In this document: positions 5,519 to 62,002 of the stretch, one piece after another | How positions within the stretch are numbered: position 1 is the stretch's first letter | How the letters are laid out: every line of letters starts with the position of its first letter | IMG/VR virus record: IMGVR_UViG_3300017917_001123 | Coordinates: 1 to 64,000 of that record | DNA: 64,000 bases | Strand: one strand, 5' to 3' | Translations under genes and position numbers: made by a program | Notes under the pieces: generated by a model | Told to the model about the DNA's origin: nothing | What the model saw: the letters and a program-made list of their open reading frames with translations, nothing else | Database searches by the model: none

Positions 5519-5561
5519 AATTCTTGATTTATAGATTTTTATATCTGTAAATATCCGAGAC

Positions 5562-7149: not shown

Positions 7150-7166
7150 CTTGCTTAATAAGGAGA
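7150..7166 (+). promoter_or_regulatory. ROSE-like RNA thermometer hairpin over dnaK SD
   Basis: CTTGCTT-AAT-AAGGAG, bulged G opposite SD. Confidence 0.55.
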
Positions 7167-7171
7167 AAAAT

Positions 7172-27292: not shown

Positions 27293-27466
27293 ATGATTTC
27301 ATATACTGTAACACTCGAAGAAGACCCCGCAACTGGCGAATTAATCATGCCATTTCCTCCCGACCTGCTTAACCAAATGGGTTGGGATTTTGGAGACACA
27401 ATTATTTGGCATGATAACCAGGACGGGTCTTTTTCTTTGACTAAGAAAGAGCAAGATGACAACTAA
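27293..27466 (+). CDS. AbrB/MazE-like small DNA-binding protein
   Basis: LIMPFPPDLL.QMGW..GD.I.W; leaderless after TATAAT. Confidence 0.65.
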   Translation: MISYTVTLEEDPATGELIMPFPPDLLNQMGWDFGDTIIWHDNQDGSFSLTKKEQDDN

Positions 27467-33400: not shown

Positions 33401-36400
33401 ACTTTCACAAACAGTTGCGGCTTATAACTACATCAAATCAATTCTGCCAGATATCATCCAAGGTACCGCTCTAGCAGTAACACAACAAAATACTGTTCCT
33501 CAAGTTATTATTGGCTACGGTCCAGGAGATGCTTCTGCTGTAACACAAGCACAGGCTAAGATTGATGTTGTTACTAACATTACTTCTAACGGTCCAAGTG
33601 TGGCTAGTGCTCAAAGCACATTACCGTTAACAAGAAGCACTGATCCAGATATTATCAACGGAGCAATTTTACTATCAGCAAACAGAACATTTATTATTGC
33701 TGAAACTATTGCGTTTGTTAATAATTCTTTCTTAACAGGATTTGTTTACGATAGAGAAACTTGCCGTAGAGACATTGGCTTAATTGTCGATGCGTTAGCA
33801 TTTGACTTAAAGAACGGTGATATTAACTCATCAATTAACGCGGCTGATAGCTATTACGCAGGCAATGTTCAACAAGTTCTTCAAAACGAACTAGCACAAA
33901 CTGTGGGCGCAATCGGTTATATTAATACTCTAGCGCAACAACTATTTGATCAAACTCCTATTACAACACTATACGGTTTTGTTCCACAGAGAATAGACAC
34001 TATTATTGGTGAAGTAGGGGCAAAGGCTCAAGTTACCAACCTAACTACAGCAATGCAGGGTATCTTAAACAACGATCCTGCGTTCAACCCACCTAAGTAT
34101 AACGACGAAATGGACATCTTCTTAATGAACGATGCGACCATGTTACGTTACTTAGGCGGTAACGGTCACGGTGGCTTTATGAAGGTACTTGACCCAGAAG
34201 GACAAATTAAATCTAAGTCACCATATACTCAGACATGTTCATCATTCTCACAGAGTATTGGCCGACACAGATTTGCTGGTGGTTTCTTTGTTGACGGATT
34301 CTGCGGTAACTTGCCATTAGTTACAGCAGCCGGTACAGCAAGTCCAGATACAAACGGTAACTTAATTTACATTCCAGTAACTGGCGTGAGACGTTTACCT
34401 GTATTCCCAACTTACTTTATTCACGAAGGTGTTAAGTACGAAGCGGACTACATGCAGAATTATGACCCAGTTAACCAAACTGGTACTCTTGTTCTAAACC
34501 CAAACAACCCAGGTGGTATTAGTTCCGTAAGTGTTAACAGCGGAAATACACAAAACGAATTTAAACCGAACGTTGCTCAACTACCAGTAACATTTAGTTC
34601 TCCAGGCACACCTGGTGGTGCTACTGCTCGTGGTTATGCTGTAACTAACGCATCTGGTAATATACAAACCATTGTTATCACATTCCCAGGTGTAGGATAT
34701 GTAACAGAACCAAGTGTTAGCCTAGGCGGTGCTACGTTTAACTTTATTATCGACGGCGGTGCTATTACATCAATGTCTGTCAACTACGGCGGTATTGGTT
34801 ATACAACAGGTACACAAATTAATATTGCAAGTCCAGGCGGTGCCGGGTTAACTGCTACCGCAACAATTACAGGTGTTGACGGACTTGGCGCAATTACTTC
34901 TATCAATTTAGTATCAGGCGGTACAGGATACACTAGTGTTCCAACTGTTACATTTGGTCGTCAAGTATTCAGCGCAAACTTAGTAAACGGCTTTATTGGC
35001 AATTTACCATCAAAACTAGAACTAATTACTGCTGGTAACCGTTCTATGTTAGCCAACGACTTTACACAGTTAAACGATTTAGGCTATGGTATTTTTGCTA
35101 CCAACGGTGGATTCATCGAAAACGTTTCGATGTTCACTTACTACTGCTATACCTCATACTACGCACTGAACGGTGCTATTCTAAGAACTATTACAGGTTC
35201 TACAGCTTACGGTACTTACGGTCTAGTCGCAGAAGGTTCAAACCCATTAGAGGTACCAACTGCGGTTACAATGTCAGACGAATTAACACAGATTGCTACT
35301 GTTTATAATCAGGCTCCGTACATTAACGCCAAAGGCGGTGCTGACATTTATGTAACACTAGACAGCACCTACGGTTACCCTCCATACTCTAATGGGGAAA
35401 TTGAGATCAATCACAACGGTATTAGAAAGACATATTCTCTAAGATCTGCTAAACAGATTTCTGGAAACTTATATGCTCTATCAATTGATTCAACCGGTGG
35501 TGGATTATACGCTATTGTTCCGAACGGCGAGCCGTTGACAATTCGTGTTAAGTTTATTTGGAGACTAGGCGGCTTAAATGCTAAGACATTAACTCGTCCA
35601 AGTACAGTTTTAACACTGGCGGAAAACTCAATTTACAACTACCGTATTCTAGAGTACACAGACTTAGGTAGTGACTATGCGTTAGCTGAAGCTGATCAGT
35701 CATATGACTACATTCAACTAACTCCATACAGTCAGAGTAACCTATATCGCCAAGGTGTTGGTCGCCCAACTATCAGCGTTGCTGGTAGTGGTTACACTTC
35801 GACAACTACACAGTATGGTGTAACATTTGACAGTCCTCCATCAAAGACTGCGGTAGTTAACGGTGTTCAGGGAACTGTTGATAGTCCAGTAACACAGTTA
35901 TCGATCGCAAGTTCTAGCGGAGCAATTCACCCTGGTATGAGAATTACTGGTGCTGGCGCTATTGCTAACCAGTACGTAACTTGGGTGAGCTTGGATAGAT
36001 CTATTATTCAAACAAGCCAGGCACAGGTTTGGTCGACTGCAAGTGCTACACTAACATTTGTTGGTACTACCGCAACTGGTTATGCCAAGGCCAACGGAAC
36101 AAGCATTACTGGAATCACAATTACTGATCCCGGTACTGGTTACGACACAGCGCCAGGTGTTACAATCGTACCCGGAAGTGGTGTACAAGCTCAGGCAACT
36201 GTTTCCTTAAGCGGTACAAGCGGAACTAACATTGTTAAGGTTCTTCCTTTAAATGGACAAGATACTGCTCGTATTAACATTGGACTAACAAGCCCAACTC
36301 CATACTATTACGTATTTGGTTACGAAGGTCAGACTTATAAGATTACAGATTATAAGACTCCTGTTCAAACAGGTCAAGCATGGGGCGAAATTCAAATTTC

Positions 36401-38849: not shown

Positions 38850-41560
38850 TGACAGCACCAGTATGGGTAACACCAGCAGGTGATTTAGGAACCATTGAGC
38901 AAGTCAGGGCTTGTAACATAAGTTTACAAGCCTCTGGTTCCAACATCACATATTCGTTAATCAGCGGAGAAATTCCTAAAGGTCTACAGATAAACACAAC
39001 AACTGGAAGCCTTTACGGAACACCATTTTACGTTGGTAATAATATTGACTACGAATTTGTTATCCGTGCTAAAAATTCTAGTGGTGCTTCGGATAGAACA
39101 TTTACACTAACTGTGGCCGGTCCAGTGGATCCATTATGGGATACGCCAGCTGGTTACTTACAAGTCGGTCCTAACTTAGAACCTTATGCCTTAAACAAAA
39201 ATCGTGTTGACTTTAGATTACAGGCAACCGTAGCAGGCTTGCCTCAAGGCCAAAGCCTAAGATACTATATTGCCGAAAATGACGGCCAGCTTCCTCCCGG
39301 ACTATCTCTAAACGAATCTACAGGATTAATCAACGGGTATGTTAATGATCAGCTGACTATTGATTATCTTGCTAGTAAGAGTGGCGGATACGATGCTGAG
39401 TACTACGACGTATATCCATATGATCATGCGTTAATTATTAATAACGTTGTAGAAGGTAAGCTAGTAAGTATCACAAAAATTTATCAGTTTTACATAACAG
39501 TAACTGACGGTGTTAGTGCGTCTAGAAGAAAATTCCAAATTAGAATCGAAGACCCTAATACTTTTAGAGCAGATACAACACAGATCACTGATGATACAAC
39601 CAACTACCTAGCAAACATTGGATATCTAATTCCTCCAATTTGGTTAGGTACCGATAATAGCATTTTACCTAACCCAAGTAATTTAGGTACACTCCGTGCT
39701 AACAATAATCAGGTAATAGATTTAAACGCATACGATCCATATCCTTTTGTAGGTCCTATTAGTTTTGATTGGGAAACTATTCAAGTTAATCCCGAAATTA
39801 GAATGTTGTCCAACTCAGAGACAAACATTACAGGTGCGCCAACTTCAAACTTAGCAGGACAAAGTTTTTTAATTGTTAGTAAGGCAGTCGGTGTTCCGAC
39901 TGCTGGAATGTACTTACAGTTATTCACTTACCTTCCGAACGCAACACAAACAATTTACAGAATTAATTCAGTAGAAAAATACGGTAGTGATGGCTATAAA
40001 CTAGGTATTGGTATTGTAACAAAGTATAAGGGGGAAATTAACACAGTTAACAATTTCCCTTTATCAAATACCGCGGGGGATATGTACAAGGTACTGGCTG
40101 ATAATCGGTATTACGTGTGTACTGGAGTTCCGTCTACATTTATTGATGTAGGAGCAAATGCGCCTGGGTACATTGATTATTACTTAGAAAATACAATTAC
40201 AGATCTTACCACAGTATTTGTTGGAAGTTTAAGTAAGCAACCGCCAGGCTTGGAATTAGATATTGAATCTGGATTACTATACGGACGTATTCCTTATCAA
40301 CCTGCTTACAGTCAAAACTACAGATTTACTGTAAGAATTACAAAAACTGATCAAGAAAATGGCCAGTCAGTTTCCGATAATCATATCTTTAATCTAACAC
40401 TTAAAGGCGATATCGAAACTACTATTGCCTTTACCAGCGGAACAGTTCTAGGCGACCTAAGACCAGGACATGTTAGCGAGTTATCAGTTGAAGCAATTCA
40501 TACTGCCGCAAATTTAGATATCACTTATAGCTTAACTGGAGGTAAGCTACCACCGGGATTAACTTTAACACCGACTGGAAATATTACAGGTGTAATCCCT
40601 ACAAATATTCAAACTAACTTTGATGTTGGAGCAACTGGGTTTAACACAACAACCTTTGACGGCGGAACTACAACATTCGACAGAACATATACATTTAATA
40701 TCACTGCTAGAGATAGTTACTTGTTCTCAGCCGTAAGTAAAGATTTTACAATTAACATTGTCGAAAACACAGTCACACCTTACACAAATATCTACGTTAA
40801 ACCATTATTAAAGAAAGAACAACGAGCATACATTAGAAGTCTTGTAGAAGATCTCAATATTTTTGATCCAAAGCTAATGTACAGACTCGACGACCCAAAC
40901 TTCGGTGTTCAACGAGAAGTTAAGATGACACTCGAATACGGTGTTCAAAAAATTGACCTAGACAAGTATGTCCCGGCCCTCACAACTTACTTTAAAAGAA
41001 GAAGATATTTCTTTGGCGATTTGAAAACAGCCATTGCTGTTGATAGCAAGGGCAACCATTTATATGACGTAGTCTACTTAGATATTGTCGATGACCAGAT
41101 GCTTGGAAATACCATCAGTGTAGCAAAGAGCTTTACTCAGGAAGTTAACGGACAAATAGTCACATACTATCCCGACAGCGTTTTAAACGAGCAATTTGCC
41201 ATAAGTTCAATTACCATTGATGCGAACCATCCAATATCTATTAACGATGAGTATAGACCTAGATTTATGCAGACTCTACAAGCCGATACTGGCGTTCCAT
41301 TGGGGTTTGTTAAGGCACACGTCTTATGCTACACGTTACCTAACGAAAGCAGTAAAATTGTAAGCAGTATTAAAAGATCTGGTTTTGATTTTAAATTAAT
41401 CGACTTCGATATTGATAGAATTGTCATCGAAGATACACTAGATTTTGAAGGTAAAAAATATCTAGTGTTTGGAGCAAGCAGTACAGATACTGGCTTCTAT
41501 CTAAGCACCGAAGACGATGAGGATATCTTAACTGAGGATGAGGTAGCTTTATCAATATAA
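38849..41560 (+). CDS. Virion structural protein with Ig-like repeats
   Basis: Repeated LPPGL.L....G.I.G.P..Y.F motifs. Confidence 0.75.
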   Translation: MTAPVWVTPAGDLGTIEQVRACNISLQASGSNITYSLISGEIPKGLQINTTTGSLYGTPFYVGNNIDYEFVIRAKNSSGASDRTFTLTVAGPVDPLWDTPAGYLQVGPNLEPYALNKNRVDFRLQATVAGLPQGQSLRYYIAENDGQLPPGLSLNESTGLINGYVNDQLTIDYLASKSGGYDAEYYDVYPYDHALIINNVVEGKLVSITKIYQFYITVTDGVSASRRKFQIRIEDPNTFRADTTQITDDTTNYLANIGYLIPPIWLGTDNSILPNPSNLGTLRANNNQVIDLNAYDPYPFVGPISFDWETIQVNPEIRMLSNSETNITGAPTSNLAGQSFLIVSKAVGVPTAGMYLQLFTYLPNATQTIYRINSVEKYGSDGYKLGIGIVTKYKGEINTVNNFPLSNTAGDMYKVLADNRYYVCTGVPSTFIDVGANAPGYIDYYLENTITDLTTVFVGSLSKQPPGLELDIESGLLYGRIPYQPAYSQNYRFTVRITKTDQENGQSVSDNHIFNLTLKGDIETTIAFTSGTVLGDLRPGHVSELSVEAIHTAANLDITYSLTGGKLPPGLTLTPTGNITGVIPTNIQTNFDVGATGFNTTTFDGGTTTFDRTYTFNITARDSYLFSAVSKDFTINIVENTVTPYTNIYVKPLLKKEQRAYIRSLVEDLNIFDPKLMYRLDDPNFGVQREVKMTLEYGVQKIDLDKYVPALTTYFKRRRYFFGDLKTAIAVDSKGNHLYDVVYLDIVDDQMLGNTISVAKSFTQEVNGQIVTYYPDSVLNEQFAISSITIDANHPISINDEYRPRFMQTLQADTGVPLGFVKAHVLCYTLPNESSKIVSSIKRSGFDFKLIDFDIDRIVIEDTLDFEGKKYLVFGASSTDTGFYLSTEDDEDILTEDEVALSI

Positions 41561-43830: not shown

Positions 43831-44310
43831 ATGATTTTCAATCACGTAAAAGAACTAAAACAACAAGGCAAAAAGATTGGAATAACCTTTTCCACTTTTG
43901 ATATGCTACACGCCGGGCATATCGCAATGCTAGCCGAAGCAAAGAATCACTGCGACTATCTTATCGCAGGACTACAGACTGATCCAACTATAGATCGCCC
44001 AACTGAAAAGAATAGACCAGTTCAAAGTATTGTCGAACGCCAAATTCAACTTGCGGCTTGCCGTTATGTTGACGAAGTGGTAGTATATCAAACAGAGCAA
44101 GATCTAATCGACCTGTTGCTTATTCTGCCCGTCGATGTTAGAATACTAGGTGTCGAGTACGAACAAAAGAATTTCACAGGGCGAAGCGAATGTGCTGAAA
44201 AAGGCATCGAACTAGTGTTTAACAGTCGAGACCATTCTTTTAGCTCTAGCAGTTTGCGTAAGCGAGTAGCACAAGCAGAAACTAATAAAATTTTAAAGGA
44301 AGAACAATGA
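43831..44310 (+). CDS. Cytidylyltransferase (TagD/RfaE-like)
   Basis: TFDMLHAGH, R.H.FSSS.LR. Confidence 0.88.
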   Translation: MIFNHVKELKQQGKKIGITFSTFDMLHAGHIAMLAEAKNHCDYLIAGLQTDPTIDRPTEKNRPVQSIVERQIQLAACRYVDEVVVYQTEQDLIDLLLILPVDVRILGVEYEQKNFTGRSECAEKGIELVFNSRDHSFSSSSLRKRVAQAETNKILKEEQ

Positions 44311-45227
44311 AAGAATTGTGGGTAGAAAAATATCGTCCTAAACGTATTGCTCAATATGTGTTTAGAGATGACCATCAGCGTAAGCAAGTTGAGTCATGGG
44401 TTAAGGAAGGATCAATTCCACATCTTTTGTTAAGCGGATCTGCTGGTATTGGTAAAACTACCCTTGCTAAAGTTCTATGTCACGAGTTAGGGATTGAAGA
44501 ATACGACATTCTAGAAATCAACGCTTCACGTGATAACAACGTTGAAACTGTTCGTGATAAAATTATCAACTTTGTACAAATGATTCCTTTCGGTCCGTTT
44601 AAGGTCGTGCTACTTGACGAGGCTGATTATCTAACTCCAAACGCACAGGCTATCTTACGTGGTGTTATGGAAACATACTCAAGCACAAGTCGATTCATTC
44701 TAACTTGTAACTATCCTAATCGTATTATTCCTGCGATCCATAGTCGCTGTCAAGGCTTCCATGTTGAGAAAACTGATCAGACAGAATTTACTGCTCGTGT
44801 AGCAACTATTTTAGTCGAAGAAAATGTTGAGTTCGACTTAGACACACTTGACACGTATGTTAAGGTAACTTATCCAGACTTGCGTAAGTGTATTAACATG
44901 GTACAGCAACATGTTAATGATAACAAGTTGGCAATGCCAGATCGTGGAGATGAAGGCGAAGCAGACTACAAGTTTGAAATGGTTGAATTGTTTAAGAAAG
45001 GGCAAATCCAAGCCGCACGTAAATTAGTTTGTGCTAGTGCTCGTCCGGAAGAAATGGAAGATGTATATCGCTGGATGTACGATAACTTGGATTTATTTGG
45101 CAAGGACGAAGAAACAAAAGATGCGGCTTTGTTGATTATTAAACAAGGTCTAGTAGATCATACAATTATTGCCGATCCAGAAATTAATCTTGCCGCAACG
45201 CTTGTTAAGTTAGCAAGACTTCAATAA
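44307..45227 (+). CDS. Clamp loader ATPase subunit (RFC/gp44-like)
   Basis: WVEKYRP, GSAGIGKTT, LDEAD, SRC. Confidence 0.93.
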   Translation: MKELWVEKYRPKRIAQYVFRDDHQRKQVESWVKEGSIPHLLLSGSAGIGKTTLAKVLCHELGIEEYDILEINASRDNNVETVRDKIINFVQMIPFGPFKVVLLDEADYLTPNAQAILRGVMETYSSTSRFILTCNYPNRIIPAIHSRCQGFHVEKTDQTEFTARVATILVEENVEFDLDTLDTYVKVTYPDLRKCINMVQQHVNDNKLAMPDRGDEGEADYKFEMVELFKKGQIQAARKLVCASARPEEMEDVYRWMYDNLDLFGKDEETKDAALLIIKQGLVDHTIIADPEINLAATLVKLARLQ

Positions 45228-51912: not shown

Positions 51913-52422
51913 ATGCTAGATATAGTTAAATTCCCAAATCCAATTTTAAGACAGAAGATGCCGGACTTCGACTTTTCAAATCCAGTTATGGACCCAAAAG
52001 AACTGGAGAAAGAAATGATCGAAACAATGTTAAAGAACTACGGAATGGGTCTGGCCGCCAATCAAGTAGGAATAGCTACACGGGTGTTTACTATGGGACA
52101 CCCAACAATGCCAGAAAATGCCAAAGCGTTTTTTAATCCAGAAATTGTAGCAAACACAGAATCTGTCAAAGATTTGGAAGAAGGATGCTTGAGTTTTCCC
52201 GGAATTTATGTTAATATTAAACGTCCTACAGCCATAAAGGCTCGTTGGCAAAATAGTTCCGGTGAATGGGAGGAGGGAGAGTTTGAAGGATACGAATGTA
52301 AATGCTTCTTACATGAATTCGATCATTTGGAAGGAATTGTTTTTTCAGATCGAGTCAGTCAGTTAAAATGGGCTATGGCAATTAAAAAACTTAAATCTAA
52401 TAAGAGGAAACACAATGCTTGA
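51913..52422 (+). CDS. def: Peptide deformylase
   Basis: GMGLAANQVG, EGCLS, HEFDH. Confidence 0.95.
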   Translation: MLDIVKFPNPILRQKMPDFDFSNPVMDPKELEKEMIETMLKNYGMGLAANQVGIATRVFTMGHPTMPENAKAFFNPEIVANTESVKDLEEGCLSFPGIYVNIKRPTAIKARWQNSSGEWEEGEFEGYECKCFLHEFDHLEGIVFSDRVSQLKWAMAIKKLKSNKRKHNA

Positions 52423-54691
52423 ACCAAGCCAAGACCTAGAGAAAATTTTTGAACGTGCTATTAAGCTCGCAATGAGCCATAAGCACGAATACATTACACT
52501 AGAGCATTTCTTATACGGTCTTCTCATAGATCCTAAGTTTGAAAAAACTCTTACAAACTTTGGAACAAATGTTTCCGACCTAGTAAAAGATATCGAGCTA
52601 TATGTAAGCTCAGAGCTTAACGATATCAAAATTGAAGAGGAAATTAAACCAAAGAAAACACACAGCATGGAACGTATGCTGAATCGTGCTTTCACGCAAG
52701 TATTGTTCAGCGGTCGCTCTACTATTGAGCCCGTTGATTGTTTTATTAGTTTGTTCAGCGAAAAGAAATCATTTGCTGTCTATAGCCTACGCAAGGCAAA
52801 GATCGATAAAGACAAGTTTATTGAATATATTAATCAAGAAGCGATCGAAGAAGAAGCAACAGAAGGCGAAGGTACTCCAAGCCCGCAACTCGAACGTCTG
52901 CTTGTTCAGTATTGCCAGAACCTTACTAAGAAGGCAAAAGAGAAAAAGATCGATCCAGTTATTGGCCGCGAAAAAGAAATTGAGGAAATGCAACTTATCC
53001 TTGCTCGCCGTACTAAGTCTAATGTTATGCTTATCGGTGATCCAGGCGTAGGTAAGACTGCTATCGCAGAAGGCCTTGCTAAGAAGATTGTCGAAGGCAA
53101 TGTTCCTAAGTACATTCAAGATCACACAGTTTACAACCTAGACATTAGCTCTATGCTTGCGGGCAGTAAGTATCGCGGTGATTTTGAAGAACGTCTCAAG
53201 ATGGTCATCACTGCCCTTGAGAAGAAAAAGAAATGTATTCTGTTTATTGACGAGGCACACATGATGAGTGGTGCTGGCGCAGTAAGCGGTGGTTCAAACG
53301 ACATGGCTAATATGCTCAAGCCAGCACTTGGCAAGGGCACTATTAAAGTTATCGCAAGCACAACGTGGGAAGAATTCCGCAAGCACTTTGAAAAGGATCG
53401 TGCGCTGATGCGTCGATTCCAGCGTGTTGTTGTAGACGAGCCTAATGAAGCAACTGCTATTAAGATCCTTAAAGGTCTTAAGAAGTATTACGAAAAGCAC
53501 CACAACGTTAAAATTACTAATCAAGCAATTATCGATGCTGTTAAGTATAGCGTCAAGTATATTAGTGATCGTCATTTGCCCGATAAAGCAATTGACTTGA
53601 TTGATTGTGCCTGTGCTCGCTTTAAGGTCAAAGACGAAGAAGGCGGTATTGTTGACCATGACGAGATTGTGTTCGAAGTGGCTAAGATTGCTAACTTGCC
53701 GTTAGATCAAATTGCCGCTAAGGAAAACAAGAACCTTAAGGACATGGATAAAAACATGCGAGGTAAGGTGTTTGGTCAAGAAAAAGCAATCGATGCTCTA
53801 CTTGACAAGATTTATATCGCACAAGCAGGTTTGAAATCTATTAACAAACCAGTTGGTAACTTCTTATTCGTTGGACCTACGGGTTGCGGTAAGACTGAAA
53901 CTGCTAAAGTATTAGCAGAGTCTATGGGTGTTCAATTGGTTCGCTTTGATATGAGCGAATTCCAAGAACAACATTCTGTAGCAAAGTTCATTGGTGCGCC
54001 TCCGGGATATGTTGGATTTGAGGACAATGCCGGCCAACTTATTACTAAACTACAAGAACATCCTAACTGTATTCTATTGCTTGACGAAATCGAAAAAGCA
54101 CACCCAAGCGTAAGCCAAGTACTGCTAGGATTGATGGATAACGGATTTGTAACTGGTTCTAATGGTAAGAAGGCAGATGGTCGTAACGCAATCATCATTC
54201 TTACTTCTAACCTAGGCGCATCAGATGCTGAAAAGAACGCTGTTGGTTTCGGTAAGATGGAACGTGATTACGATAACAAAGATGCTGTTAATCGTTTCTT
54301 TGCTCCAGAATTCCGCAATCGTTTAGACGGCATTATCCAGTTCAACAAACTCGGTCAAGATACAATGATTAAGATTGTTAAGAAGTTTATCGACGAACTT
54401 AATGCTCTTATTAAAGATAAGAATATTCATGTTAAACCAGACATGGCAGCTCTTGAGTATCTTGTTAAGAAAGGCTTTAATCCTAAAATGGGTGCTCGTC
54501 CGTTGGCTCGGGTTATCGATGAAGAAATTAAAAAGCCTCTATCACGAGAAATCCTGTTTGGCAAATTGTCAAACGGTGGAGTCGTAAACTTGACGTTTAA
54601 AGACGACAAGTTTGTGTTTGAGCTAGTTGAAGTATTGTCAATCGACAAAGCAGTAACGTCAGAAGAGGCAGATGAAGAAACTGTTGACTAA
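52415..54691 (+). CDS. clpA: ClpA-type AAA+ unfoldase
   Basis: HEYITLEH N-domain, two Walker A motifs, VGF ClpP-docking loop, no M domain. Confidence 0.92.
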   Translation: MLEPSQDLEKIFERAIKLAMSHKHEYITLEHFLYGLLIDPKFEKTLTNFGTNVSDLVKDIELYVSSELNDIKIEEEIKPKKTHSMERMLNRAFTQVLFSGRSTIEPVDCFISLFSEKKSFAVYSLRKAKIDKDKFIEYINQEAIEEEATEGEGTPSPQLERLLVQYCQNLTKKAKEKKIDPVIGREKEIEEMQLILARRTKSNVMLIGDPGVGKTAIAEGLAKKIVEGNVPKYIQDHTVYNLDISSMLAGSKYRGDFEERLKMVITALEKKKKCILFIDEAHMMSGAGAVSGGSNDMANMLKPALGKGTIKVIASTTWEEFRKHFEKDRALMRRFQRVVVDEPNEATAIKILKGLKKYYEKHHNVKITNQAIIDAVKYSVKYISDRHLPDKAIDLIDCACARFKVKDEEGGIVDHDEIVFEVAKIANLPLDQIAAKENKNLKDMDKNMRGKVFGQEKAIDALLDKIYIAQAGLKSINKPVGNFLFVGPTGCGKTETAKVLAESMGVQLVRFDMSEFQEQHSVAKFIGAPPGYVGFEDNAGQLITKLQEHPNCILLLDEIEKAHPSVSQVLLGLMDNGFVTGSNGKKADGRNAIIILTSNLGASDAEKNAVGFGKMERDYDNKDAVNRFFAPEFRNRLDGIIQFNKLGQDTMIKIVKKFIDELNALIKDKNIHVKPDMAALEYLVKKGFNPKMGARPLARVIDEEIKKPLSREILFGKLSNGGVVNLTFKDDKFVFELVEVLSIDKAVTSEEADEETVD

Positions 54692-56214: not shown

Positions 56215-59091
56215 ATGCTTTTAACTGAATTTTTTAAGATTGTCAATGAAGGCGGAAACCTTGCTGTAGGTGGGCAAGAGGCTGAACAAATTAATTTAAA
56301 GGTTACTAACAGAAGTTATATTGTTCCTATCCTAAACGACCTTCTTTCAGGCATCAATAGTGCGTTCAATAAAAAATACAAGAAGCCCCTATGGAATCCT
56401 GAACTAATTCAAAATCAAAGATTCCTAAGCGGAAGTTCTCTACACTTTTTTAACGTAAGAGGAATTCCGGACGAGGTATTTGTACAAAAGAAACCAAAGG
56501 TTGGCGACATTGACACAATGGTTCCTAGAGAACTAGAAGCAGAACTAGAACAGTTCTTAGCAAGTATTCAAGGAAAGCAAATCGGTAGCGCAAAGTTTAT
56601 TGGCTTCCAGCGTGGTAACGAACAGTTCAGCAGTCTTTGGGAATTACAAGAACCTCCTATTAAAATTCAAATTGATTTAGAGTTTGTTGAATACCAGCAA
56701 GGTAATCCAACAGACTGGGCAAGATTTAGTCACAGCTCAAGCTGGGACGATATGAGCGAAGGTGTTAAGGGCGTTTTCCACAAGTGGATGATTAACGCAT
56801 TAACAAGTCTAACATCTCAAGACTTCTTACTTCGAAAGATGGTAGGCCGAGGCAACGCAAGAGCAGAACAGAATGTTCCTACAACAGACAACATGATTTC
56901 TTTTGCTGTTAGTAGTAAAGAGGGCGGTGGCCTACGTGCCAAGTACGAGCCAGTCCTAGATGCCAGCGGTCAGCCGCTAGTAGTAGACGGGTTGCCTGTT
57001 ATGAAGAGATTACCTACAACAGGCTACGAACAAGATCTAGGAAAGATATTTCAAGCAATATTAGGCCATAGAGTAAATGAAAAAGGTCTACAACAAGCGT
57101 TACCAAAAACTTGGTCATTTGTCGGATTGCTAGACTTAGCCAATTCTATCTTTACACAAGAAGAAAAACAAAATCTTGTTCAAAGTATGATCAACAAATG
57201 CTACGGACAAGGCGCACAGGGTTTATATAAAAACGATCCTGAAAGAGATTCTGCTGAAAAAGATGCGGCACTTAATTTAATGTTCAAGAAATTAGGAGTT
57301 CAACCTCCGGCAGACTTTAAGCAGATAAAAGCAGACTACGTAGCAAACTATCGTCGTGTAAGCGAAAGCCGTTTATTTGAAGAAGAGCCACAGGTAAAGG
57401 CACAGTTCCGCAAAGGCATGCCGCACTTACGCAACCTTAAGCCTGCGGACTTAATTGACTTCTTGGAAGAACTACACGAAAAGAACGGTGCTTTCAAATT
57501 AGCAAACATTCCGCTAAATGTTAAAGTTGACGGCTTTGGCGGACGGTTTGGAAAGAACAGCGAAGGTAAGCCTTTTATGGCAACTAGCAGAACAGAGCCT
57601 CGCTACGAAGCAGGCTTTGTTAAGTATCATCAACAAAAAGGCACAACAGATCCAGAGATCCTACAACGTGCTGGATTATTTGATCAGCTATTCAACGAAA
57701 TGATGAAGGCTGTTAAACTTGTCGACAGCAAGTTAGGACCAGACTTCTTAGTAAACAAACAAGTTACTTGTGAAGTTTTATTCTTGCCATTTGCTACACG
57801 TACAGAAAGCGGTCGACTAAAGTTTGTAGGAATAGAATACGACGAACTACCCAAGGGTGTTGACCTAGCCCTAGTCCCATTCCGTGTAACTGATGCCACA
57901 ACAGGAGATGATCTTCCAGATGGAGATCAGATTGTTGAAAAATTAACCACCTTAGGACAACAAGGTAGTGTTATGTTTATTAACAATAGTCTAACACAGG
58001 ACGAGGCATTAGATGTTACTGCTATTGTTCCGCCTATGGAGAACCTACAACAGTTCAAGGCTATGTTAGCAAGTCGTAAGCGTGATCAAGTTGCCGCAGT
58101 AAAGGCCGCAATGGAACCAGTTGGACTTGCTTTAGAGAAAGCAATCGGTGAGGATCCTAATATTGTAGGCAAAGACATCCTCGGTAAAGATTACGAAGGC
58201 ATTGTTATTAACACACGCATGGGTCCTGTTAAAGTAACTAGCCCAGAACAAAAACAAATTATTGCTAACAAGCAGGCCGCAAAAGCAACTGCTCGTCAAG
58301 AACAACCCCGAGACAATCAAAAGAAGGTAGCTGTAGTTGCTATCGGTAGTGCTATTGGGCACATGGGGCATCAACAACTATTTGATTTTGCTGTTAAGAA
58401 AGCAGATGAAACCGGTGGGGATCCGTATTTCTTTATCGGTAATGCTGAAGGTAAGGATGATCCTATTCCTGTACCCGATAAAGTTAAAACGTGGCATCTA
58501 CTCTATCCGCAGTATGCTAAGAACATTAGTGCAGTTACTATGGAGGGAGGGTCATTACTCCAAAAAGTTAAACACGAGCTAATTAATCCGTTGCCCAACA
58601 AACTTCCTAGATATACTACTATCTATATAGTTGTAGGTAAGGACAGAGAAATGATGGCAAATCAAATGGCTAGTGCTTTAATGAAAGCAGTTAATAAGTT
58701 TCCAGGATACGAAAACGTTAAAGCGATTCCATATGTAACAAGCAGAAGCGAAGACGAAGGCGGAACAGGAGTGAGTGGTACTGCCCTGCGCACAGCCATT
58801 AAAACAAAAACTCCGGAAGAAGCATTTGCAATATGGGACAAAGCATTTAATGGTGGTAACTTTGGTGCTGAAAAAATTCCGGCCGAATGGATTAAGCATT
58901 TAATGAGTGTAGCAAAACAGAATATGAATATTCAAAAGCCTGCTCCTGCTCAATTACCTAAGCAGGCAAAGCCACAGGTAAAACTACCACAACAACCTGC
59001 TCCACAACCAAAACGAGGCCAAGTTAATGTCGGCGAAGCGTGGGAAGTAGAAATTGCCAAAGCTATTTCTTTACTAGAAGGTAAGAAATGA
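56215..59091 (+). CDS. Multidomain nucleotidyltransferase (Pol-beta NTase + ligase-like KxDG + HxGH domain)
   Basis: GSS...GDID...QID; VKVDG...EGIVI...VKV; GHMGH...VGKDR...SGTALR. Confidence 0.7.
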   Translation: MLLTEFFKIVNEGGNLAVGGQEAEQINLKVTNRSYIVPILNDLLSGINSAFNKKYKKPLWNPELIQNQRFLSGSSLHFFNVRGIPDEVFVQKKPKVGDIDTMVPRELEAELEQFLASIQGKQIGSAKFIGFQRGNEQFSSLWELQEPPIKIQIDLEFVEYQQGNPTDWARFSHSSSWDDMSEGVKGVFHKWMINALTSLTSQDFLLRKMVGRGNARAEQNVPTTDNMISFAVSSKEGGGLRAKYEPVLDASGQPLVVDGLPVMKRLPTTGYEQDLGKIFQAILGHRVNEKGLQQALPKTWSFVGLLDLANSIFTQEEKQNLVQSMINKCYGQGAQGLYKNDPERDSAEKDAALNLMFKKLGVQPPADFKQIKADYVANYRRVSESRLFEEEPQVKAQFRKGMPHLRNLKPADLIDFLEELHEKNGAFKLANIPLNVKVDGFGGRFGKNSEGKPFMATSRTEPRYEAGFVKYHQQKGTTDPEILQRAGLFDQLFNEMMKAVKLVDSKLGPDFLVNKQVTCEVLFLPFATRTESGRLKFVGIEYDELPKGVDLALVPFRVTDATTGDDLPDGDQIVEKLTTLGQQGSVMFINNSLTQDEALDVTAIVPPMENLQQFKAMLASRKRDQVAAVKAAMEPVGLALEKAIGEDPNIVGKDILGKDYEGIVINTRMGPVKVTSPEQKQIIANKQAAKATARQEQPRDNQKKVAVVAIGSAIGHMGHQQLFDFAVKKADETGGDPYFFIGNAEGKDDPIPVPDKVKTWHLLYPQYAKNISAVTMEGGSLLQKVKHELINPLPNKLPRYTTIYIVVGKDREMMANQMASALMKAVNKFPGYENVKAIPYVTSRSEDEGGTGVSGTALRTAIKTKTPEEAFAIWDKAFNGGNFGAEKIPAEWIKHLMSVAKQNMNIQKPAPAQLPKQAKPQVKLPQQPAPQPKRGQVNVGEAWEVEIAKAISLLEGKK

Positions 59092-59381
59092 AACAGTATA
59101 AAATAACCAGCGAACATTTAAATACTGACAGTCCAGATGATTGCCAGCTAGATCCAAACGATCCAATTCACGAGCTAAAGGTTGTTCAATATTTGGCAGG
59201 GCTAGGTGCCCAACAACGTTTAGCAGAGTACAGAAATAGTTTAAATCAAGGTAGCAATATTACATTGACAGCCGCAGAAAATGCACGTATAATGCGTGAA
59301 CAAAACATTAAACCAGGAACACCAGAATGGTTTAAGTTATGGTTCAGCTTACCGTACTTTACAGGCGAGAAGAAAACATGA
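59088..59381 (+). CDS. Hypothetical phage protein
   Basis: IKPGTPEWFKLWF. Confidence 0.7.
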   Translation: MKQYKITSEHLNTDSPDDCQLDPNDPIHELKVVQYLAGLGAQQRLAEYRNSLNQGSNITLTAAENARIMREQNIKPGTPEWFKLWFSLPYFTGEKKT

Positions 59382-59686
59382 GAGCTGAACAATTTTTAAA
59401 CAAACAATGGTTGACTGAGGATTGGCAAAAGGTCAACAAGAAAGACAAAACAGACGGAATGAGCGACAAGGCTGTTAAAGCATATCGTCGTGAAAATCCA
59501 GGTAGCAAATTAAAAACTGCTGTAACCAAAGACCCAAGTAAAATTAAAAAGGGATCTAGTGATGACAAGCGCCGTTCGAGCTTCTGTGCTAGAATGAGCG
59601 GAATGAAGAAGGCACATGCCTCAGCAAAAACAAAACGAGATCCCGATAGCCCAATTAACAAAGCACTAAGACGTTGGAACTGTTAA
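59378..59686 (+). CDS. Small basic phage protein
   Basis: RRSSFCARM.GMK...INKALRRWNC. Confidence 0.75.
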   Translation: MRAEQFLNKQWLTEDWQKVNKKDKTDGMSDKAVKAYRRENPGSKLKTAVTKDPSKIKKGSSDDKRRSSFCARMSGMKKAHASAKTKRDPDSPINKALRRWNC

Positions 59687-59687
59687 C

Positions 59688-60521
59688 ATGAAGAAACCAG
59701 AAGTGTATCTAGATATGGACGGAGTATTGGCGGACTTCTTTACGGAGTACGCTAAACTTGCCGGAATTAAAAGCGGAAACTATAGAGACATTCCGCCTGC
59801 TAAGACTGATCCTACATTACAAAAAATGGTAGGTACAGATTTTTTTGCTCGTTTGCCTAAGTTTCCATCAGCAGACGACTTAGTGTCTATGGTTGTAAAG
59901 ATGTATGGACATTATCATATTTGCTCGAGCCCTTTGCGTGGAGATCACGAAAACTCAGAAGCACAAAAGAAAGTGTGGATTGAAAAACATCTAAATCCAC
60001 AACCTGTTGATATTGTTATTACTCCGAATAAAGCAAAATGGGCAGTTCAAAAAGACGGTACTCCTAACATTCTTATTGATGACAGAGGTAGCAATATTTC
60101 TGCTTGGGAGGCCGCAGGCGGTATTGGTATCAAATATCAAGCCGACGAGGACAGTTTACAAACCGTTGTTCAAGGATTAAGTCGTGCTAATAAAATCCTA
60201 AAAGGAGAAGAAAAGCACGAGCCACAAAAATTAGTAAGCAAAGATCGCAGTTTGCCAGTAGCAACACACGACAAACCAAATAGCGCATCAGATTTAACAA
60301 CTGTTAAAGAATACGTAAGTTCTTCAGCAGTAACCGGAGTAGCGGCAGTGGGCGGATCAAGTGCCAGCGTTGGTCATCAACTACAACGTAGAGCATTTAA
60401 TAAGTCTTATACAGGAAGCCCTACTACAGGAACAGGTAAAAAATCACCTAAACAACCAAAGCCTAAAATGCAAAAGCCAGGCACAAACGCATTAGATAGC
60501 AAAGGACCATTAGTAACATGA
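59688..60521 (+). CDS. HAD 5'(3')-deoxyribonucleotidase (NT5C-like) with basic tail
   Basis: YLDMDGVLADF, K..W, ILIDD. Confidence 0.85.
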   Translation: MKKPEVYLDMDGVLADFFTEYAKLAGIKSGNYRDIPPAKTDPTLQKMVGTDFFARLPKFPSADDLVSMVVKMYGHYHICSSPLRGDHENSEAQKKVWIEKHLNPQPVDIVITPNKAKWAVQKDGTPNILIDDRGSNISAWEAAGGIGIKYQADEDSLQTVVQGLSRANKILKGEEKHEPQKLVSKDRSLPVATHDKPNSASDLTTVKEYVSSSAVTGVAAVGGSSASVGHQLQRRAFNKSYTGSPTTGTGKKSPKQPKPKMQKPGTNALDSKGPLVT

Positions 60522-62002
60522 ACGAGAATAAAAAAGGCGTAAGAGCCAAAAAACATAAAGTAGCTCATATCGAGCCAAGCAAGCCTCGCAACTTTGTTGC
60601 TAAGAATGCTATTCAGGGCGGAGCAGGTGCTCACAAGGATAAAAAGAAAGCAATGAAGCAAGGTGATACTAAGCACAAGAAAAGTTATGCCGAACATCTT
60701 GACGTTATGTTAAAAAATGCGTTAACAGAAACTAGACAACTTAACGAAACAGGCCTAGACCCAATTCGCCGAATGAAGGCTATTCAATTCATTTGTAACA
60801 AGACAGGTTGGGAAAAGAATTACTTAGAACTAGCCAGCGACGAAGAATTAATGGATCTATACGTAAAAATTAAAAAAGGCGAACCAGTAGGCGAAGGTGG
60901 CGGAATCAGTAAAGATAAAGAAACCAAATTCCATGCTAAGTTAGACAAACTAGTTCACAACACATTTGGTAAAAGAAAAGACGAAAGCGTAAATCCAGAA
61001 TACGACGACGAAGCCGGTATGGCCGACAATAACTTAGAAACACTAGAACGTGCTGTTCAAGGTATTGACGACTTAATCAACAAAGGCGACAATTTGCCCG
61101 AGTGGTGCCAAGAAAAGATTGCTGTTGCTAAATCAATGTTAGTTACAGTTTGGGACTACATGAAGTCTGAAGAAGAAAAAGGCGTATCAGAAGGCGATGA
61201 CCAAAATGTATATAATGTCGACTGGATTGAAAAAGTTCGAGCTGAAGTGGAATCCGGAAGAGATTTAGACGATGCGTTAGATGATCTTCGATACGAATTA
61301 GAAAACGAATATGATGCTGACGAAAATACCGTAGCAAATATTTTAGCTAAAGTTGAGATTAACCTTTCAGACTTACGCTACGGCCTGGGAGAGCAACTAC
61401 AAAAAGTTTCAGAAGGTTCTAAAGTCGACCGCCAAGCAATGCACATTACTAAAAGCATGATGAAACGTCATGGTATGAGCCGCGACGAAGCCGAGGCTGC
61501 GGCCTGGGCACATATCAAGCATCCTAAAAAGAAAAAAGCTCGCAAGGAAAGCGTAGCGGAAGGCGCAATGGATGAACTTTACGCAGATTTATCTGATGCG
61601 TATAATAAACTTGCTCCAAGTATTGAAAAATACAAAGACAAAAAGGGTGCTGAAAATCTATATCAGACTTTAGCGGCAATCGCTAAACAATACGGTGCTG
61701 TTTCAGAATTTAAACGAATGTTAAATGGTGCTCAAAATCGTGCCCATTTAGATTACGATACTAACCCGGGCGGGTTTGAAAACTGGTTCTGGTACTTACC
61801 GTTTGCTGACGATCAAGTAGATGAAGCTTGCTGGAAAAATTACAAACAAATTGGTATGAAAAAGAAAGGTGGACGTACAGTTCCTAATTGCGTACCTAAA
61901 GAAGGTTGGACACACGACAGCTTGGCCGCACAATTATTTGAGCAAGAGTTAACCTACGAAGACAAGCTAAATAACATGTTAGCAAAGAAGATTCAAAAAT
62001 GA
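60518..62002 (+). CDS. Modular polyprotein-like head protein
   Basis: Short modules separated by [LVI]xE motifs; CWKNY..GMKKK...VPNCV module. Confidence 0.65.
   Translation: MNENKKGVRAKKHKVAHIEPSKPRNFVAKNAIQGGAGAHKDKKKAMKQGDTKHKKSYAEHLDVMLKNALTETRQLNETGLDPIRRMKAIQFICNKTGWEKNYLELASDEELMDLYVKIKKGEPVGEGGGISKDKETKFHAKLDKLVHNTFGKRKDESVNPEYDDEAGMADNNLETLERAVQGIDDLINKGDNLPEWCQEKIAVAKSMLVTVWDYMKSEEEKGVSEGDDQNVYNVDWIEKVRAEVESGRDLDDALDDLRYELENEYDADENTVANILAKVEINLSDLRYGLGEQLQKVSEGSKVDRQAMHITKSMMKRHGMSRDEAEAAAWAHIKHPKKKKARKESVAEGAMDELYADLSDAYNKLAPSIEKYKDKKGAENLYQTLAAIAKQYGAVSEFKRMLNGAQNRAHLDYDTNPGGFENWFWYLPFADDQVDEACWKNYKQIGMKKKGGRTVPNCVPKEGWTHDSLAAQLFEQELTYEDKLNNMLAKKIQK

What the first reader, a model, noticed from the sequence alone, without database searches (positions are those of the whole stretch)
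56215..60521. Three unrelated nucleotidyltransferase folds in one ORF, next to a HAD nucleotidase
Seen: Pol-beta-type GS..DxD..D domain (aa ~1-385), an ATP-grasp ligase/capping-type KxDG..EG.V..K domain (~390-700) and an HxGH Rossmann domain (~700-905), with a putative cleavage linker (VSESRLFE) between the first two; an NT5C-like phosphatase lies two genes downstream. Inference: an RNA/tRNA end-healing and sealing module, or a nucleotide-signal/NAD rescue module, which would fit the tRNA-like RNAs in this genome.
Basis: partly seen in the sequence, partly recalled or inferred. Interest (0 to 1): 0.7.

Follow-up and report, generated by a model that had tools for sequence, protein, structure and literature searches.

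The report
Capsid-targeted three-enzyme nucleic-acid end-processing polyprotein
One 958-residue gene of a 331-kb phage fuses a polymerase-beta-type nucleotidyltransferase, an RNA-ligase-like enzyme and a HIGH-type nucleotidyltransferase, and conserved protease sites suggest it is packed into the phage head, cut, and injected with the DNA; its function has never been tested.

Summary

The three parts also occur as adjacent separate genes in T4-like phages. A ligase-like plus HIGH-NTase gene pair is nearly universal in marine cyanomyoviruses.

New finding: 232 of 239 D1 N-termini end in [LIVM]-x-E just before the invariant GGN. 154 of 156 D1-D2 linkers carry the same motif. Separate D2 and D3 genes carry their own T4-like capsid-targeting starts. 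The genome encodes a gp21-type prohead protease. A cyanophage D3 homologue was detected in virions by mass spectrometry. So the protein is most likely head-packaged, cleaved and injected.

The NT5C link is weak (12 of 80 related loci). The substrate (RNA or DNA ends) and D3's role remain inferred.

The parts
56215..59091 (+). Whole ORF, 958 aa plus stop: the D1-D2-D3 polyprotein
   Evidence: ORF list. More than 828 full-length homologues in metagenomes. All 80 of the closest viral contigs have the three domains in one ORF.
56215..56250 (+). aa 1-12, MLLTEFFKIVNE: capsid-targeting-like propeptide ending in V10-N11-E12, directly before the invariant G13-G14-N15
   Evidence: 232 of 239 unique family N-termini have [LIVM]-x-E directly before GGN, with a preceding peptide of mostly 9-17 aa. 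Residues 1-13 have pLDDT below 50. Positions match those of the T4 capsid targeting sequence as described in PMC9026906.
56251..57354 (+). D1, aa 13-380: Pol-beta-superfamily nucleotidyltransferase (G73-S74; D98, D100; D154, E156) with a helical C-terminal lobe
   Evidence: Alignment A1 invariants. AF2 pLDDT 93. Fold searches. phrog_19290 at E 2e-29. No Pfam family in any of 67 members.
57355..57408 (+). Variable D1-D2 linker, aa 381-398, holding the conserved protease-type site L387-F388-E389 | E390 (nt 57373-57381)
   Evidence: 154 of 156 unique linkers carry [LIVM]xE[ADEGS] (shuffles: mean 32, max 43). 101 of 156 carry [LI]xEA (shuffles: mean 4.4, max 12). Alignment shown. Some homologues have inserts of 100-180 aa here.
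57409..58299 (+). D2, aa 399-695: ligase-type (covalent) nucleotidyltransferase domain, RNA-ligase-like, without an OB domain. Motif I K437-V-D-G (R444), III E520, IV E661-G662, V K673
58312..58944 (+). D3, aa 700-910: HIGH-superfamily (cytidylyltransferase-like) nucleotidyltransferase. G715-H716-M-G718-H719, D749-P750, G808-x-D810, VSGTALR859
   Evidence: Alignment A5 invariants. phrog_3041 at E 3e-12. PF06574 in 34 of 36 members. RibF FMNAT profile hit at 4e-4. ESM Atlas neighbours are PF01467 phage clusters. The D3 HMM hits cyanophage cytidylyltransferases at E 1e-15 to 9e-24.
58945..59088 (+). aa 911-958: low-complexity Pro/Gln/Lys tail. This is where homologues carry variable extra domains.
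   Evidence: Conservation ends near aa 906-915. Extensions in homologues hold Phage_lysozyme+LysM, Amidoligase_2, DUF6934 or p494-like sequence.
60518..62002 (+). 494-aa basic protein. Its homologue is fused to the C-terminus of the polyprotein in 15 of 80 related loci. Carries a C-W-x2-Y-K-x-x-G-x-K-K-K-x-G-x2-V-P-N-C-V-P-K-E motif at aa 435-467.
   Evidence: Present in 56 of 80 loci and fused in 15. The motif is shared with the HIGH-NTase protein of Methylophilales phage Melnitz, pairwise E 2e-9.
59688..60521 (+). NT5C-like HAD phosphatase (DMDGV motif) with a low-complexity tail. A neighbour, probably not a functional partner.
   Evidence: Pfam PF06941 at 27 bits, phrog_2643 at 2e-23. A homologue is in only 12 of 80 related loci.

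Best explanation
The gene encodes a phage-specific polyprotein that is delivered through the capsid.

Proposed sequence of events:
1. A short N-terminal peptide (aa 1-12), built like the T4 capsid targeting sequence, takes the protein into the prohead core.
2. The phage's own gp21-type prohead protease cuts after E12 and after E389. This frees D1 (Pol-beta-type NTase) and leaves D2-D3 as one piece (RNA-ligase-like domain plus HIGH-type NTase).
3. The pieces stay in the head and enter the host cell with the DNA.
4. In the cell they act on polynucleotide ends. D1 adds one or a few nucleotides to a 3'-OH end. D2 charges K437 with AMP and seals a 3'-OH/5'-phosphate break. RNA is the more likely substrate, because D2 resembles RNA ligases more than DNA ligases and has no OB domain.
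5. D3 makes or uses an NMP-phosphate-X compound. Its nearest relatives are NMN and FMN adenylyltransferases. Its substrate is unknown. The guess is that it serves the ligase step, for example by supplying a nucleotide cofactor.

Shown here: the three folds, the catalytic motifs, the modular gene linkage, the motif conservation at both proposed cut sites, and the presence of the protease gene.

Inferred: packaging, cleavage, injection, the substrates, and every enzymatic activity.
For: Folds and invariant catalytic residues.

Functional linkage of the parts:
- Fused in all 80 of the closest loci.
- D1+D2, D2+D3 and single-domain architectures exist among representative proteins.
- They are adjacent separate genes in Xanthomonas phage BUDD, Stenotrophomonas phage Mendera and T4-like contigs L017, L018 and L181.
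- A different HIGH-NTase subfamily (PF01467) holds the same position in BUDD and Mendera.
- The DUF6267 ligase-like gene sits next to a D3-like gene in 71 of 80 cyanophage loci.
- Atlas clusters exist with DUF6267 fused to CTP_transf_like.

Packaging and cleavage:
- [LIVM]xE directly before GGN in 232 of 239 N-termini.
- The same motif in 154 of 156 linkers against about 32 in shuffles.
- Residues 1-13 are disordered in the model.
- Separate D2 and D3 genes start with their own capsid-targeting-like peptides.
- A Peptidase_S77 prohead protease is in the genome, E 1e-27.
- T4 capsid-targeting and gp21 rules are as described in PMC9026906.
- The S-CREM2 cytidylyltransferase (D3 HMM E 2.6e-15) was found in virions by mass spectrometry (PMC10665884).
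- Homologues carry lysozyme+LysM or amidoligase extensions, as injected polyvalent proteins do (PMC5512222).

RNA rather than the replicative DNA ligase role: the window's genome, BUDD and Mendera each also have a canonical ATP-dependent DNA ligase. The window's genome has no Rnl1, Rnl2 or RtcB. RlaP, a Pol-beta NTase linked to RNA ligases, adds 1-2 NMP to damaged RNA 3' ends (preprint 10.64898/2025.12.29.696909).
Against: - No activity, packaging or cleavage has been shown for this protein. The conserved E before GGN could be structural rather than a cleavage site.
- A ligase of this type needs 3'-OH and 5'-phosphate ends. No kinase or phosphatase to heal nuclease-cut tRNA was found.
- The gene context in T4-like phages is replication and recombination (DNA polymerase, UvsX, helicase), and a Dps-like gene recurs nearby. 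Both fit a DNA role as well.
- Campylobacter and Vibrio phages carry D1 alone, with no D2, so D1 does not need the ligase.
- The role of D3 is unexplained.
- A regex scan for capsid-targeting-like starts over the whole genome was only weakly enriched (12 against 7 +/- 2.5).
Confidence: 0.45

Rival explanations
1. DNA repair kit. D1 is a Pol X-like gap-filling polymerase and D2 seals the nick. The logic matches the ASFV Pol X plus ligase pair, the ligase-Pol X fusions of giant viruses, or bacterial LigD. It would mend nicks, gaps or UV/oxidative damage in the phage genome, possibly straight after injection.
For: - Pol mu, beta and lambda and TdT are among the best structural matches of D1, aligned over about 190 residues covering aa 5-303.
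- Atlas Pol X clusters match at TM 0.55 by the hit, and a giant-virus ligase+Pol X fusion cluster also matches.
- The gene context is next to DNA polymerase, UvsX and helicase in T4-like contigs.
- A Dps-like gene recurs nearby.
- UvdE is encoded in the window.
Against: - D2 lacks the OB domain found in all known ATP-dependent DNA ligases (established knowledge).
- D1 matches no Pol X Pfam model.
- These phages already have a canonical DNA ligase.
Confidence: 0.25
2. A cytoplasmic tRNA end-healing and sealing pathway like T4 Pnkp/Rnl1, with the NT5C-like HAD enzyme as the 3'-phosphatase. It would not be packaged.
For: - The RNA-ligase-like fold of D2.
- HAD phosphatases serve in known RNA repair systems (PMC7824862).
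- The phage carries its own tRNAs and a tmRNA.
Against: - An NT5C homologue is present in only 12 of 80 related loci.
- It matches deoxyribonucleotidase families, not the Pnkp phosphatase.
- No 5'-kinase was found.
- This model does not explain the conserved [LI]xE sites and capsid-targeting-like peptides.
Confidence: 0.12
3. Nucleotide-cofactor or signalling module. D3 is an NMN adenylyltransferase that restores NAD+ in cells whose defences deplete it. D1 could also be a cGAS/OAS-like small-nucleotide synthase. The ligase-like domain would use or process the product.
For: - The separately encoded HIGH NTases of BUDD, Mendera, Melnitz and L017 match NMNAT models best, though below threshold.
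- cGAS, OAS and CD-NTases are among the structural matches of D1.
- Phage NAD+ reconstitution pathways are known (cited in PMC12801897).
Against: - No NadV/Nampt in the genome.
- The window's D3 matches only the HxGH region of FMNAT models, far below threshold.
- The NMNAT matches of its relatives score about 30 bits against cut-offs of 127 or more.
- This model gives no role to a ligase with a complete set of polynucleotide-ligase motifs.
Confidence: 0.1
4. Injected host-takeover effector. D1 nucleotidylates host tRNA ends or host proteins, as the MenT/AbiEii-type toxins or T4 Alt do, to shut off host functions. It would not repair anything.
For: - MenT4 and AbiEii-type NTases appear among the weak structural matches.
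- D1 occurs alone in many phages.
- Injected polyvalent proteins often carry modifying enzymes (PMC5512222).
Against: - The recurrent coupling with a ligase-like domain that keeps every catalytic residue argues for joining ends, not blocking them.
- The matches to toxin NTases are weaker than those to Pol X and TUTases.
Confidence: 0.08

Closest known systems
RlaP (PF10127) plus RNA ligase repair systems (T4 NrdC.11; Pseudomonas RtcB operons)
   Same: A Pol-beta-superfamily NTase with a helical C-terminal lobe is physically coupled to an RNA ligase. RlaP adds 1-2 NMP to damaged RNA 3' ends before ligation (preprint 10.64898/2025.12.29.696909).
   Different: D1 does not match PF10127 in any of 67 members. 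D1 is fused to the ligase rather than being a neighbouring gene. D1 carries a capsid-targeting-like peptide. A HIGH NTase is added.
ATP-dependent RNA ligases Rnl5 (Naegleria NgrRnl), Rnl2/REL1, Rnl1, Rnl3
   Same: The adenylyltransferase fold. Motifs I, III, IV and V lie on the same strands. There is no OB domain.
   Different: No significant sequence match to PF09511 or PF09414. D2 has an inserted helical hairpin. It has none of the accessory domains that define Rnl1 to Rnl5. Motif I has its arginine at +7 (KVDGFGGR).
Kyanoviridae (T4-like cyanophage) DUF6267 plus 'cytitidyltransferase' gene pair
   Same: A ligase-like protein (KWDG ... EGFV ... K) is followed by a HIGH NTase that the D3 HMM recognises (E 1e-15 to 9e-24). 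The starts look like capsid targeting sequences. One member was detected in virions.
   Different: There is no D1 partner (0 of 80 loci). The genes are separate. Sequence-level homology between D2 and DUF6267 is not established (hhalign probability 7%), although DUF6267 is the nearest named family by structure (TM 0.65).
T4 internal head proteins (IPI-III, Alt) with the capsid targeting sequence and gp21 processing
   Same: A peptide of about 10 residues with an aromatic at position 4, Phe at 7, a hydrophobic residue at 8 and Glu at 10. There are [LI]-x-E cut sites. A Peptidase_S77 protease gene is present.
   Different: The cargo here is a 958-aa three-enzyme protein with an internal cut site. 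Nothing has been shown experimentally for it.
Polyvalent proteins of phages and conjugative elements (Iyer et al. 2017, PMC5512222)
   Same: Several unrelated enzymatic domains sit in one polypeptide. Homologues carry variable extra domains (lysozyme+LysM, amidoligase, a second NTase). Delivery with the DNA and proteolytic processing are predicted.
   Different: None of the hub domains (zincin peptidase, ArdC, MuF) is present. The three core domains are constant, not shuffled.
Bacterial LigD and giant-virus ligase-Pol X fusions
   Same: A nucleotide-adding domain, a ligase domain and a third end-processing domain lie in one protein (established knowledge for LigD). The Pol X-ligase fusion cluster appears.
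   Different: The folds differ: LigD uses a primase-type polymerase, a ligase with an OB domain and a phosphoesterase. Here the third domain is a HIGH NTase.

Membership tests
Pol-beta nucleotidyltransferase superfamily (D1) | hG[GS] motif, DxD on the next strand, third carboxylate on a later strand of the same sheet | tested here: met
   G73-S74, D98/D100 and D154 are invariant in 67 sequences. DSSP places them at the start of helix 73-78, on strand 98-104 and on strand 150-158.
Pol-beta nucleotidyltransferase superfamily (D1) | Fold match to solved members | tested here: met
RlaP (PF10127) | Match to the family model | tested here: not met
   No PF10127 hit at E up to 0.1 in the window protein or in any of 67 D1 members.
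RlaP (PF10127) | Adds 1-2 NMP to RNA 3'-OH ends | not testable with these tools
   This is a biochemical property (preprint 10.64898/2025.12.29.696909).
Family X DNA polymerases | Match to the palm, thumb and fingers models (PF14792, PF14791, PF10391) and helix-hairpin-helix DNA-binding modules | tested here: not met
Covalent nucleotidyltransferases (ligases and capping enzymes) (D2) | Motif I KxDG lysine, motif III Glu, motif IV EG, motif V Lys, on the canonical strands | tested here: met
   K437, D439, G440, E520, E661, G662 and K673 are invariant in 44 sequences.
Covalent nucleotidyltransferases (ligases and capping enzymes) (D2) | Adenylyltransferase-domain fold | tested here: met
ATP-dependent DNA ligases and mRNA capping enzymes | OB domain following the nucleotidyltransferase domain | tested here: not met
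   D2 is followed by a single helix and then D3. The model shows no OB-like beta barrel.
Rnl1 (PF09511) and Rnl2 (PF09414) RNA ligase families | Match to the family models | tested here: not met
   1 of 44 members each, at E 0.05-0.09. Atlas TM 0.52-0.54.
DUF6267 (PF19782) | Match to the family model or profile | tested here: inconclusive
   1 of 44 members at E 2.5e-4. The D2 HMM hits the Melnitz DUF6267 protein at E 0.0024 in a small set. hhalign probability is 7%. It is the nearest named family by structure, TM 0.65/0.57.
HIGH (cytidylyltransferase-like) nucleotidyltransferase superfamily (D3) | (H/T)xGH motif after the first strand, and a C-terminal S-x-[ST]-x-x-R motif | tested here: met
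   H716-M-G-H719 and S-G-T-A-L-R859; H716, G718, H719 and R859 are invariant in 36 sequences.
HIGH (cytidylyltransferase-like) nucleotidyltransferase superfamily (D3) | Family-model match and Rossmann-like fold | tested here: inconclusive
   phrog_3041 at E 3e-12. PF06574 in 34 of 36 members, all below the cut-off. PF01467 is not reached by the window protein. No structure model could be made.
NMN adenylyltransferase (NadM, NadR, NadD) | Score above the equivalog cut-offs | tested here: not met
   The window's D3 has no NMNAT hit. Separately encoded relatives score 14-32 bits against cut-offs of 112-449.
T4-type capsid-targeted, gp21-processed head proteins | N-terminal targeting peptide ending in [LI]-x-E, and a gp21-type protease in the genome | tested here: met
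   232 of 239 N-termini. 154 of 156 linkers. PF03420 at E 1e-27.
T4-type capsid-targeted, gp21-processed head proteins | Presence of the processed protein in virions | not testable with these tools
   Only indirect evidence: the S-CREM2 D3 homologue was detected in virions by mass spectrometry (PMC10665884).
Polyvalent proteins (Iyer et al. 2017) | Hub domains (zincin metallopeptidase, ArdC-N, MuF) combined with disparate effector domains | tested here: not met
   No hub domain was found in the window protein or in ten C-terminal extensions. Only lysozyme+LysM, amidoligase, DUF6934 and a weak NTP_transf_2 were found.
NT5C / HAD phosphatases (neighbour gene 59688..60521) | DxDx[TV] motif I and a family-model match | tested here: met
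   D9-M-D-G-V. PF06941 at 27.0 bits against a cut-off of 24.8. phrog_2643 at 2e-23.

The most novel reading that the evidence does not exclude
T4-like phages, from marine cyanomyoviruses to this 331-kb phage, pack a ready-made enzyme set into the capsid and inject it with the genome. The set is a ligase-like enzyme and a HIGH-type nucleotidyltransferase, often with a Pol-beta-type end-extending enzyme. Nucleic-acid ends (host-cut tRNA, or the damaged incoming genome) could then be extended and sealed before any phage gene is expressed. The HIGH NTase would make the nucleotide donor that charges the ligase. That would make sealing independent of a host whose ATP or NAD pools have been depleted by defence systems.
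Probability: 0.2. Interest if true: 0.85.

Novelty: new variant of a known kind. Interest (0 to 1): 0.72.

Why it matters
- Two of the three domains belong to large phage-only families with no Pfam model and no literature. D1 was found in only 2 of about 185,000 prokaryote genomes, both on contigs from metagenome-assembled genomes.
- The ligase-like plus HIGH-NTase pair is a near-universal, uncharacterised gene pair of marine T4-like cyanophages, which are among the most abundant viruses known.
- If these enzymes are head-packaged and injected, they would be the first polynucleotide-joining enzymes known to be delivered with a phage genome.
- They would also give a direct handle on what happens in the first seconds of infection, such as countering tRNA-cutting or end-degrading defences or mending sunlight-damaged genomes.
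- The compact OB-less ligase and the new terminal transferase could also be useful as enzymes.

Tried and rejected
1. Complex prediction of aa 13-912 with three ATP molecules was counted but not folded. It gives no evidence either way.
2. hhalign of D2 against a cyanophage DUF6267 alignment gave probability 7%. Homology is left open.
3. I suspected that the extra gene between D1 and D2 in BUDD and Mendera, and the genes upstream of DUF6267 in cyanophages, were one nuclease-like family. BLAST shows no similarity among them, so this was dropped.
4. A link to 7-deazaguanine DNA modification was considered, because a QueE-like radical-SAM gene lies next to D1 in Campylobacter phage CP220 and near it in Mendera. 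The window's genome has only a sub-threshold QueC hit, so this was dropped.
5. D2 as the missing replicative DNA ligase: rejected for this clade, because the window's genome, BUDD and Mendera all have a PF01068 ligase. It stays open for cyanophages, which have none.
6. D1 as a CCA-adding enzyme: the phage tRNA genes encode CCA.
7. Sequence searches of D1 and D2 profiles against PDB chains found nothing.
8. Word-based searches with D2 alone gave only fragments of the same family.
9. A regex scan for capsid-targeting-like starts across the genome was only weakly enriched.

Full report
**The observation**

The window is the first 64 kb of a 331,570-bp virus record that is estimated to be 93% complete. 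ORF 56215..59091 on the + strand encodes 958 residues. Pfam finds nothing significant in it. PHROGs finds an unknown family over aa 21-377 (E 2e-29) and a 'cytidyltransferase' family over aa 693-866 (E 3e-12).

More than 828 full-length homologues exist in metagenomes at about 60% identity. Conservation ends near aa 906-915. An exhaustive search of 1.8 billion representative proteins gave 881 relatives. These include D1 alone, D1+D2, D2+D3 and D2 alone.

**Domain 1 (aa 13-380)**

- In an alignment of 67 diverse members, G73-S74, D98, D100, D154 and E156 are invariant, together with G13-G14-N15, R33, K93, H173, K185 and K190.
- The AlphaFold model is confident (pLDDT 93). It puts GS at a helix start, DxD on strand 98-104 and D154 on strand 150-158.
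- Foldseek against the PDB gives only weak hits (E no better than 4e-3), to Pol beta, lambda and mu, poly(A) polymerases, TUT1 and MenT.
- A run that does not depend on Foldseek lists only Pol-beta-superfamily enzymes in its top 50.
- No Pfam model matches any of the 67 members. That includes RlaP (PF10127) and the Pol X models.
- Viral and Atlas structure libraries return only uncharacterised phage proteins, then Pol X clusters.
- Only two contigs among about 185,000 prokaryote genomes encode a relative, and both come from metagenome-assembled genomes.

So D1 is a real Pol-beta-type NTase from a phage-restricted, undescribed family.

**Domain 2 (aa ~399-695)**

- K437-V-D439-G440, E520, E661-G662 and K673 are invariant in 44 members down to 24% identity.
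- In the model (pLDDT 95) they sit on the strands that carry ligase motifs I, III, IV and V.
- Foldseek gives probability 1.0 to Rnl3, Rnl5, REL1, Rnl1 and Rnl2, with DNA ligases after them.
- There is no OB domain.
- Pfam has no model for it.
- By structure, the nearest named family in the ESM Atlas is DUF6267 (TM 0.65), ahead of Rnl1 and Rnl2.

**Domain 3 (aa ~700-910)**

- G715-H716-M-G718-H719, D749-P750, G808-x-D810 and R859 (in VSGTALR) are invariant in 36 members.
- 34 of 36 members hit FAD_syn weakly, and the family profile hits RibF.
- Language-model neighbours are phage PF01467 clusters.
- No NMNAT or other equivalog threshold is reached.

D3 is a HIGH-superfamily NTase of unknown substrate.

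**Linkage of the parts**

- All 80 closest viral contigs have the three domains in one ORF.
- In Xanthomonas phage BUDD and Stenotrophomonas phage Mendera the order is D1, an unrelated gene, D2, then a PF01467 cytidylyltransferase. These lie between the primase/helicase and baseplate hub genes.
- In T4-like contigs, D1 and D2 are adjacent genes after the replicative helicase, with a D3-like gene close by.
- In T4-like cyanophages, a DUF6267 gene precedes a cytidylyltransferase that the D3 HMM recognises at E 1e-15 to 9e-24. The DUF6267 protein shows KWDG, EGFV and K motifs. 71 of 80 such loci have the pair and none has D1.
- Campylobacter and Vibrio phages have D1 only.

The stable core is therefore the ligase-like domain plus the HIGH NTase, with D1 as a frequent third member.

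**The neighbours**

An NT5C-like gene is present in only 12 of 80 related loci. The 494-aa protein and the Dps-like gene lie beyond it, yet they are present in 56 and 38 loci. The 494-aa protein is fused to the polyprotein in 15 loci. It shares a Cys-containing basic motif with the HIGH-NTase protein of phage Melnitz.

Extensions in other homologues hold lysozyme+LysM, amidoligase or DUF6934.

The genome has no Rnl1, Rnl2, RtcB, NAD-dependent ligase, CCA-adding enzyme, NadV or clear polynucleotide kinase. It does have a canonical ATP-dependent DNA ligase. Its tRNA genes encode CCA.

**Evidence for packaging and cleavage**

1. The D1-D2 linker varies in length and sequence, but 154 of 156 unique linkers carry [LIVM]-x-E-[ADEGS] just before the start of D2. 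Shuffled linkers average 32 and never exceed 43. The stricter [LI]-x-E-A occurs in 101 against an average of 4.4. In this protein the site is L387-F388-E389.
2. At the N-terminus, 232 of 239 unique peptides end in [LIVM]-x-E directly before the invariant GGN. The 10-residue consensus has an aromatic at position 4, Phe at 7, a hydrophobic residue at 8 and Glu at 10.
3. Those are the same positions that govern targeting (4, 7) and processing (8, 10) in the T4 IPIII capsid targeting sequence (PMC9026906).
4. Residues 1-13 are disordered in the model.
5. Where D2 or D3 are separate genes, each has its own such peptide.
6. The genome encodes a gp21-type prohead protease at E 1e-27.
7. The cytidylyltransferase of cyanophage S-CREM2 is a D3 relative (E 2.6e-15) and starts MKNFSSFLTE. 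It was detected in purified virions by mass spectrometry (PMC10665884).

**Interpretation**

I conclude that the protein is most likely targeted to the prohead, cut after E12 and E389, and injected with the DNA. This is in the manner of T4 Alt and the internal proteins. It also resembles the polyvalent proteins of Iyer et al. (PMC5512222), although it lacks their hub domains.

What it does in the cell is inferred from the folds: extension of a 3' end by D1 and sealing by D2. This is the logic of the RlaP plus RNA ligase systems. RNA is favoured as substrate because D2 resembles RNA ligases and these phages keep a separate DNA ligase.

A DNA gap-filling and nick-sealing role is a serious rival. 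It rests on the Pol X resemblance of D1, the replication-gene context, and the nearby Dps-like and UvdE genes.

The role of D3 is open.

All enzymatic activities, the packaging and the cleavage remain untested.

Noticed in passing
window 60518-62002 (motif at 61820-61918): The 494-aa basic protein carries the motif CW-x2-YK-x-x-G-x-KKK-x-G-x2-VPNCVPKE. The same motif occurs in the HIGH-NTase protein of Methylophilales phage Melnitz (pairwise E 2e-9). Homologues of the 494-aa protein are fused to the polyprotein in 15 of 80 related loci.
   Followed up: partly
window 59088-59381 and 59339-59686: Two small overlapping ORFs lie between the polyprotein and the NT5C-like gene. One is a 97-aa unknown, present in 64 of 80 related loci. 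The other is a DUF6321 protein (Pfam E 1e-12). In several PHROG families, DUF6321 forms the C-terminus of much longer phage proteins.
   Followed up: partly
L013 2902-3795 (Synechococcus phage S-RIM8) and L014 2278-3531 (phage Melnitz): Pfam DUF6267, a gene found in 207 viral contigs related to the S-RIM8 copy, shows a full set of ligase-like motifs (KWDG ... EGFV ... K-[IL]-V-D). The two phage genomes checked have no PF01068 DNA ligase. DUF6267 may be an unrecognised ligase of T4-like cyanophages.
   Followed up: partly
G000 133041-135730 (outside the window): The gp21-type prohead protease gene (134062-134484) is flanked by ORFs that start MNKFEQLLDYIVNE and MDAFKQLVESGIISE. Another ORF at 192064 starts MKTFKDYLTE. 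All three look like T4 capsid-targeting peptides and may mark other head-internal proteins.
   Followed up: partly
window 7118-9082, 52415-54691, 27456-28487, 44307-45227: The phage encodes its own Hsp70/DnaK (E 6e-258) and a ClpA/B-like double AAA+ protein. Relatives also have DnaJ and peptide deformylase. It also encodes a UvdE UV-damage endonuclease and a clamp-loader-like AAA+ protein.
   Followed up: no
window 30483-38849 and 38849-41560: A 2,788-aa ORF has no Pfam match at all. It is followed by a 903-aa protein with two He_PIG Ig-like domains.
   Followed up: no
window 221-5637; G000 320035-320428 and 329801-329875: The window holds five tRNA genes. All end in an encoded CCA. One is an odd 101-nt 'tRNA-Pro(ggg)' at 5418-5518, which may hold an insert or be a false call. 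Elsewhere the genome has a tmRNA (tag ANDEVYALAA) and a tRNA with the amber-reading anticodon CTA.
   Followed up: no
L003 3999-6167 (Campylobacter phage CP220) and L005 537-1430 (phage Mendera): In CP220 a QueE-like radical-SAM gene lies directly upstream of the D1 homologue. In Mendera one lies about 4 kb upstream of the cassette. The window's genome has no clear 7-deazaguanine genes, so this may be coincidence.
   Followed up: partly
window 59071-59088 (aa 953-958): The protein ends ...AISLLE-GKK. This is another [LI]-x-E site six residues from the C-terminus. T4 Alt is processed at both ends, so a C-terminal cut is possible here.
   Followed up: no
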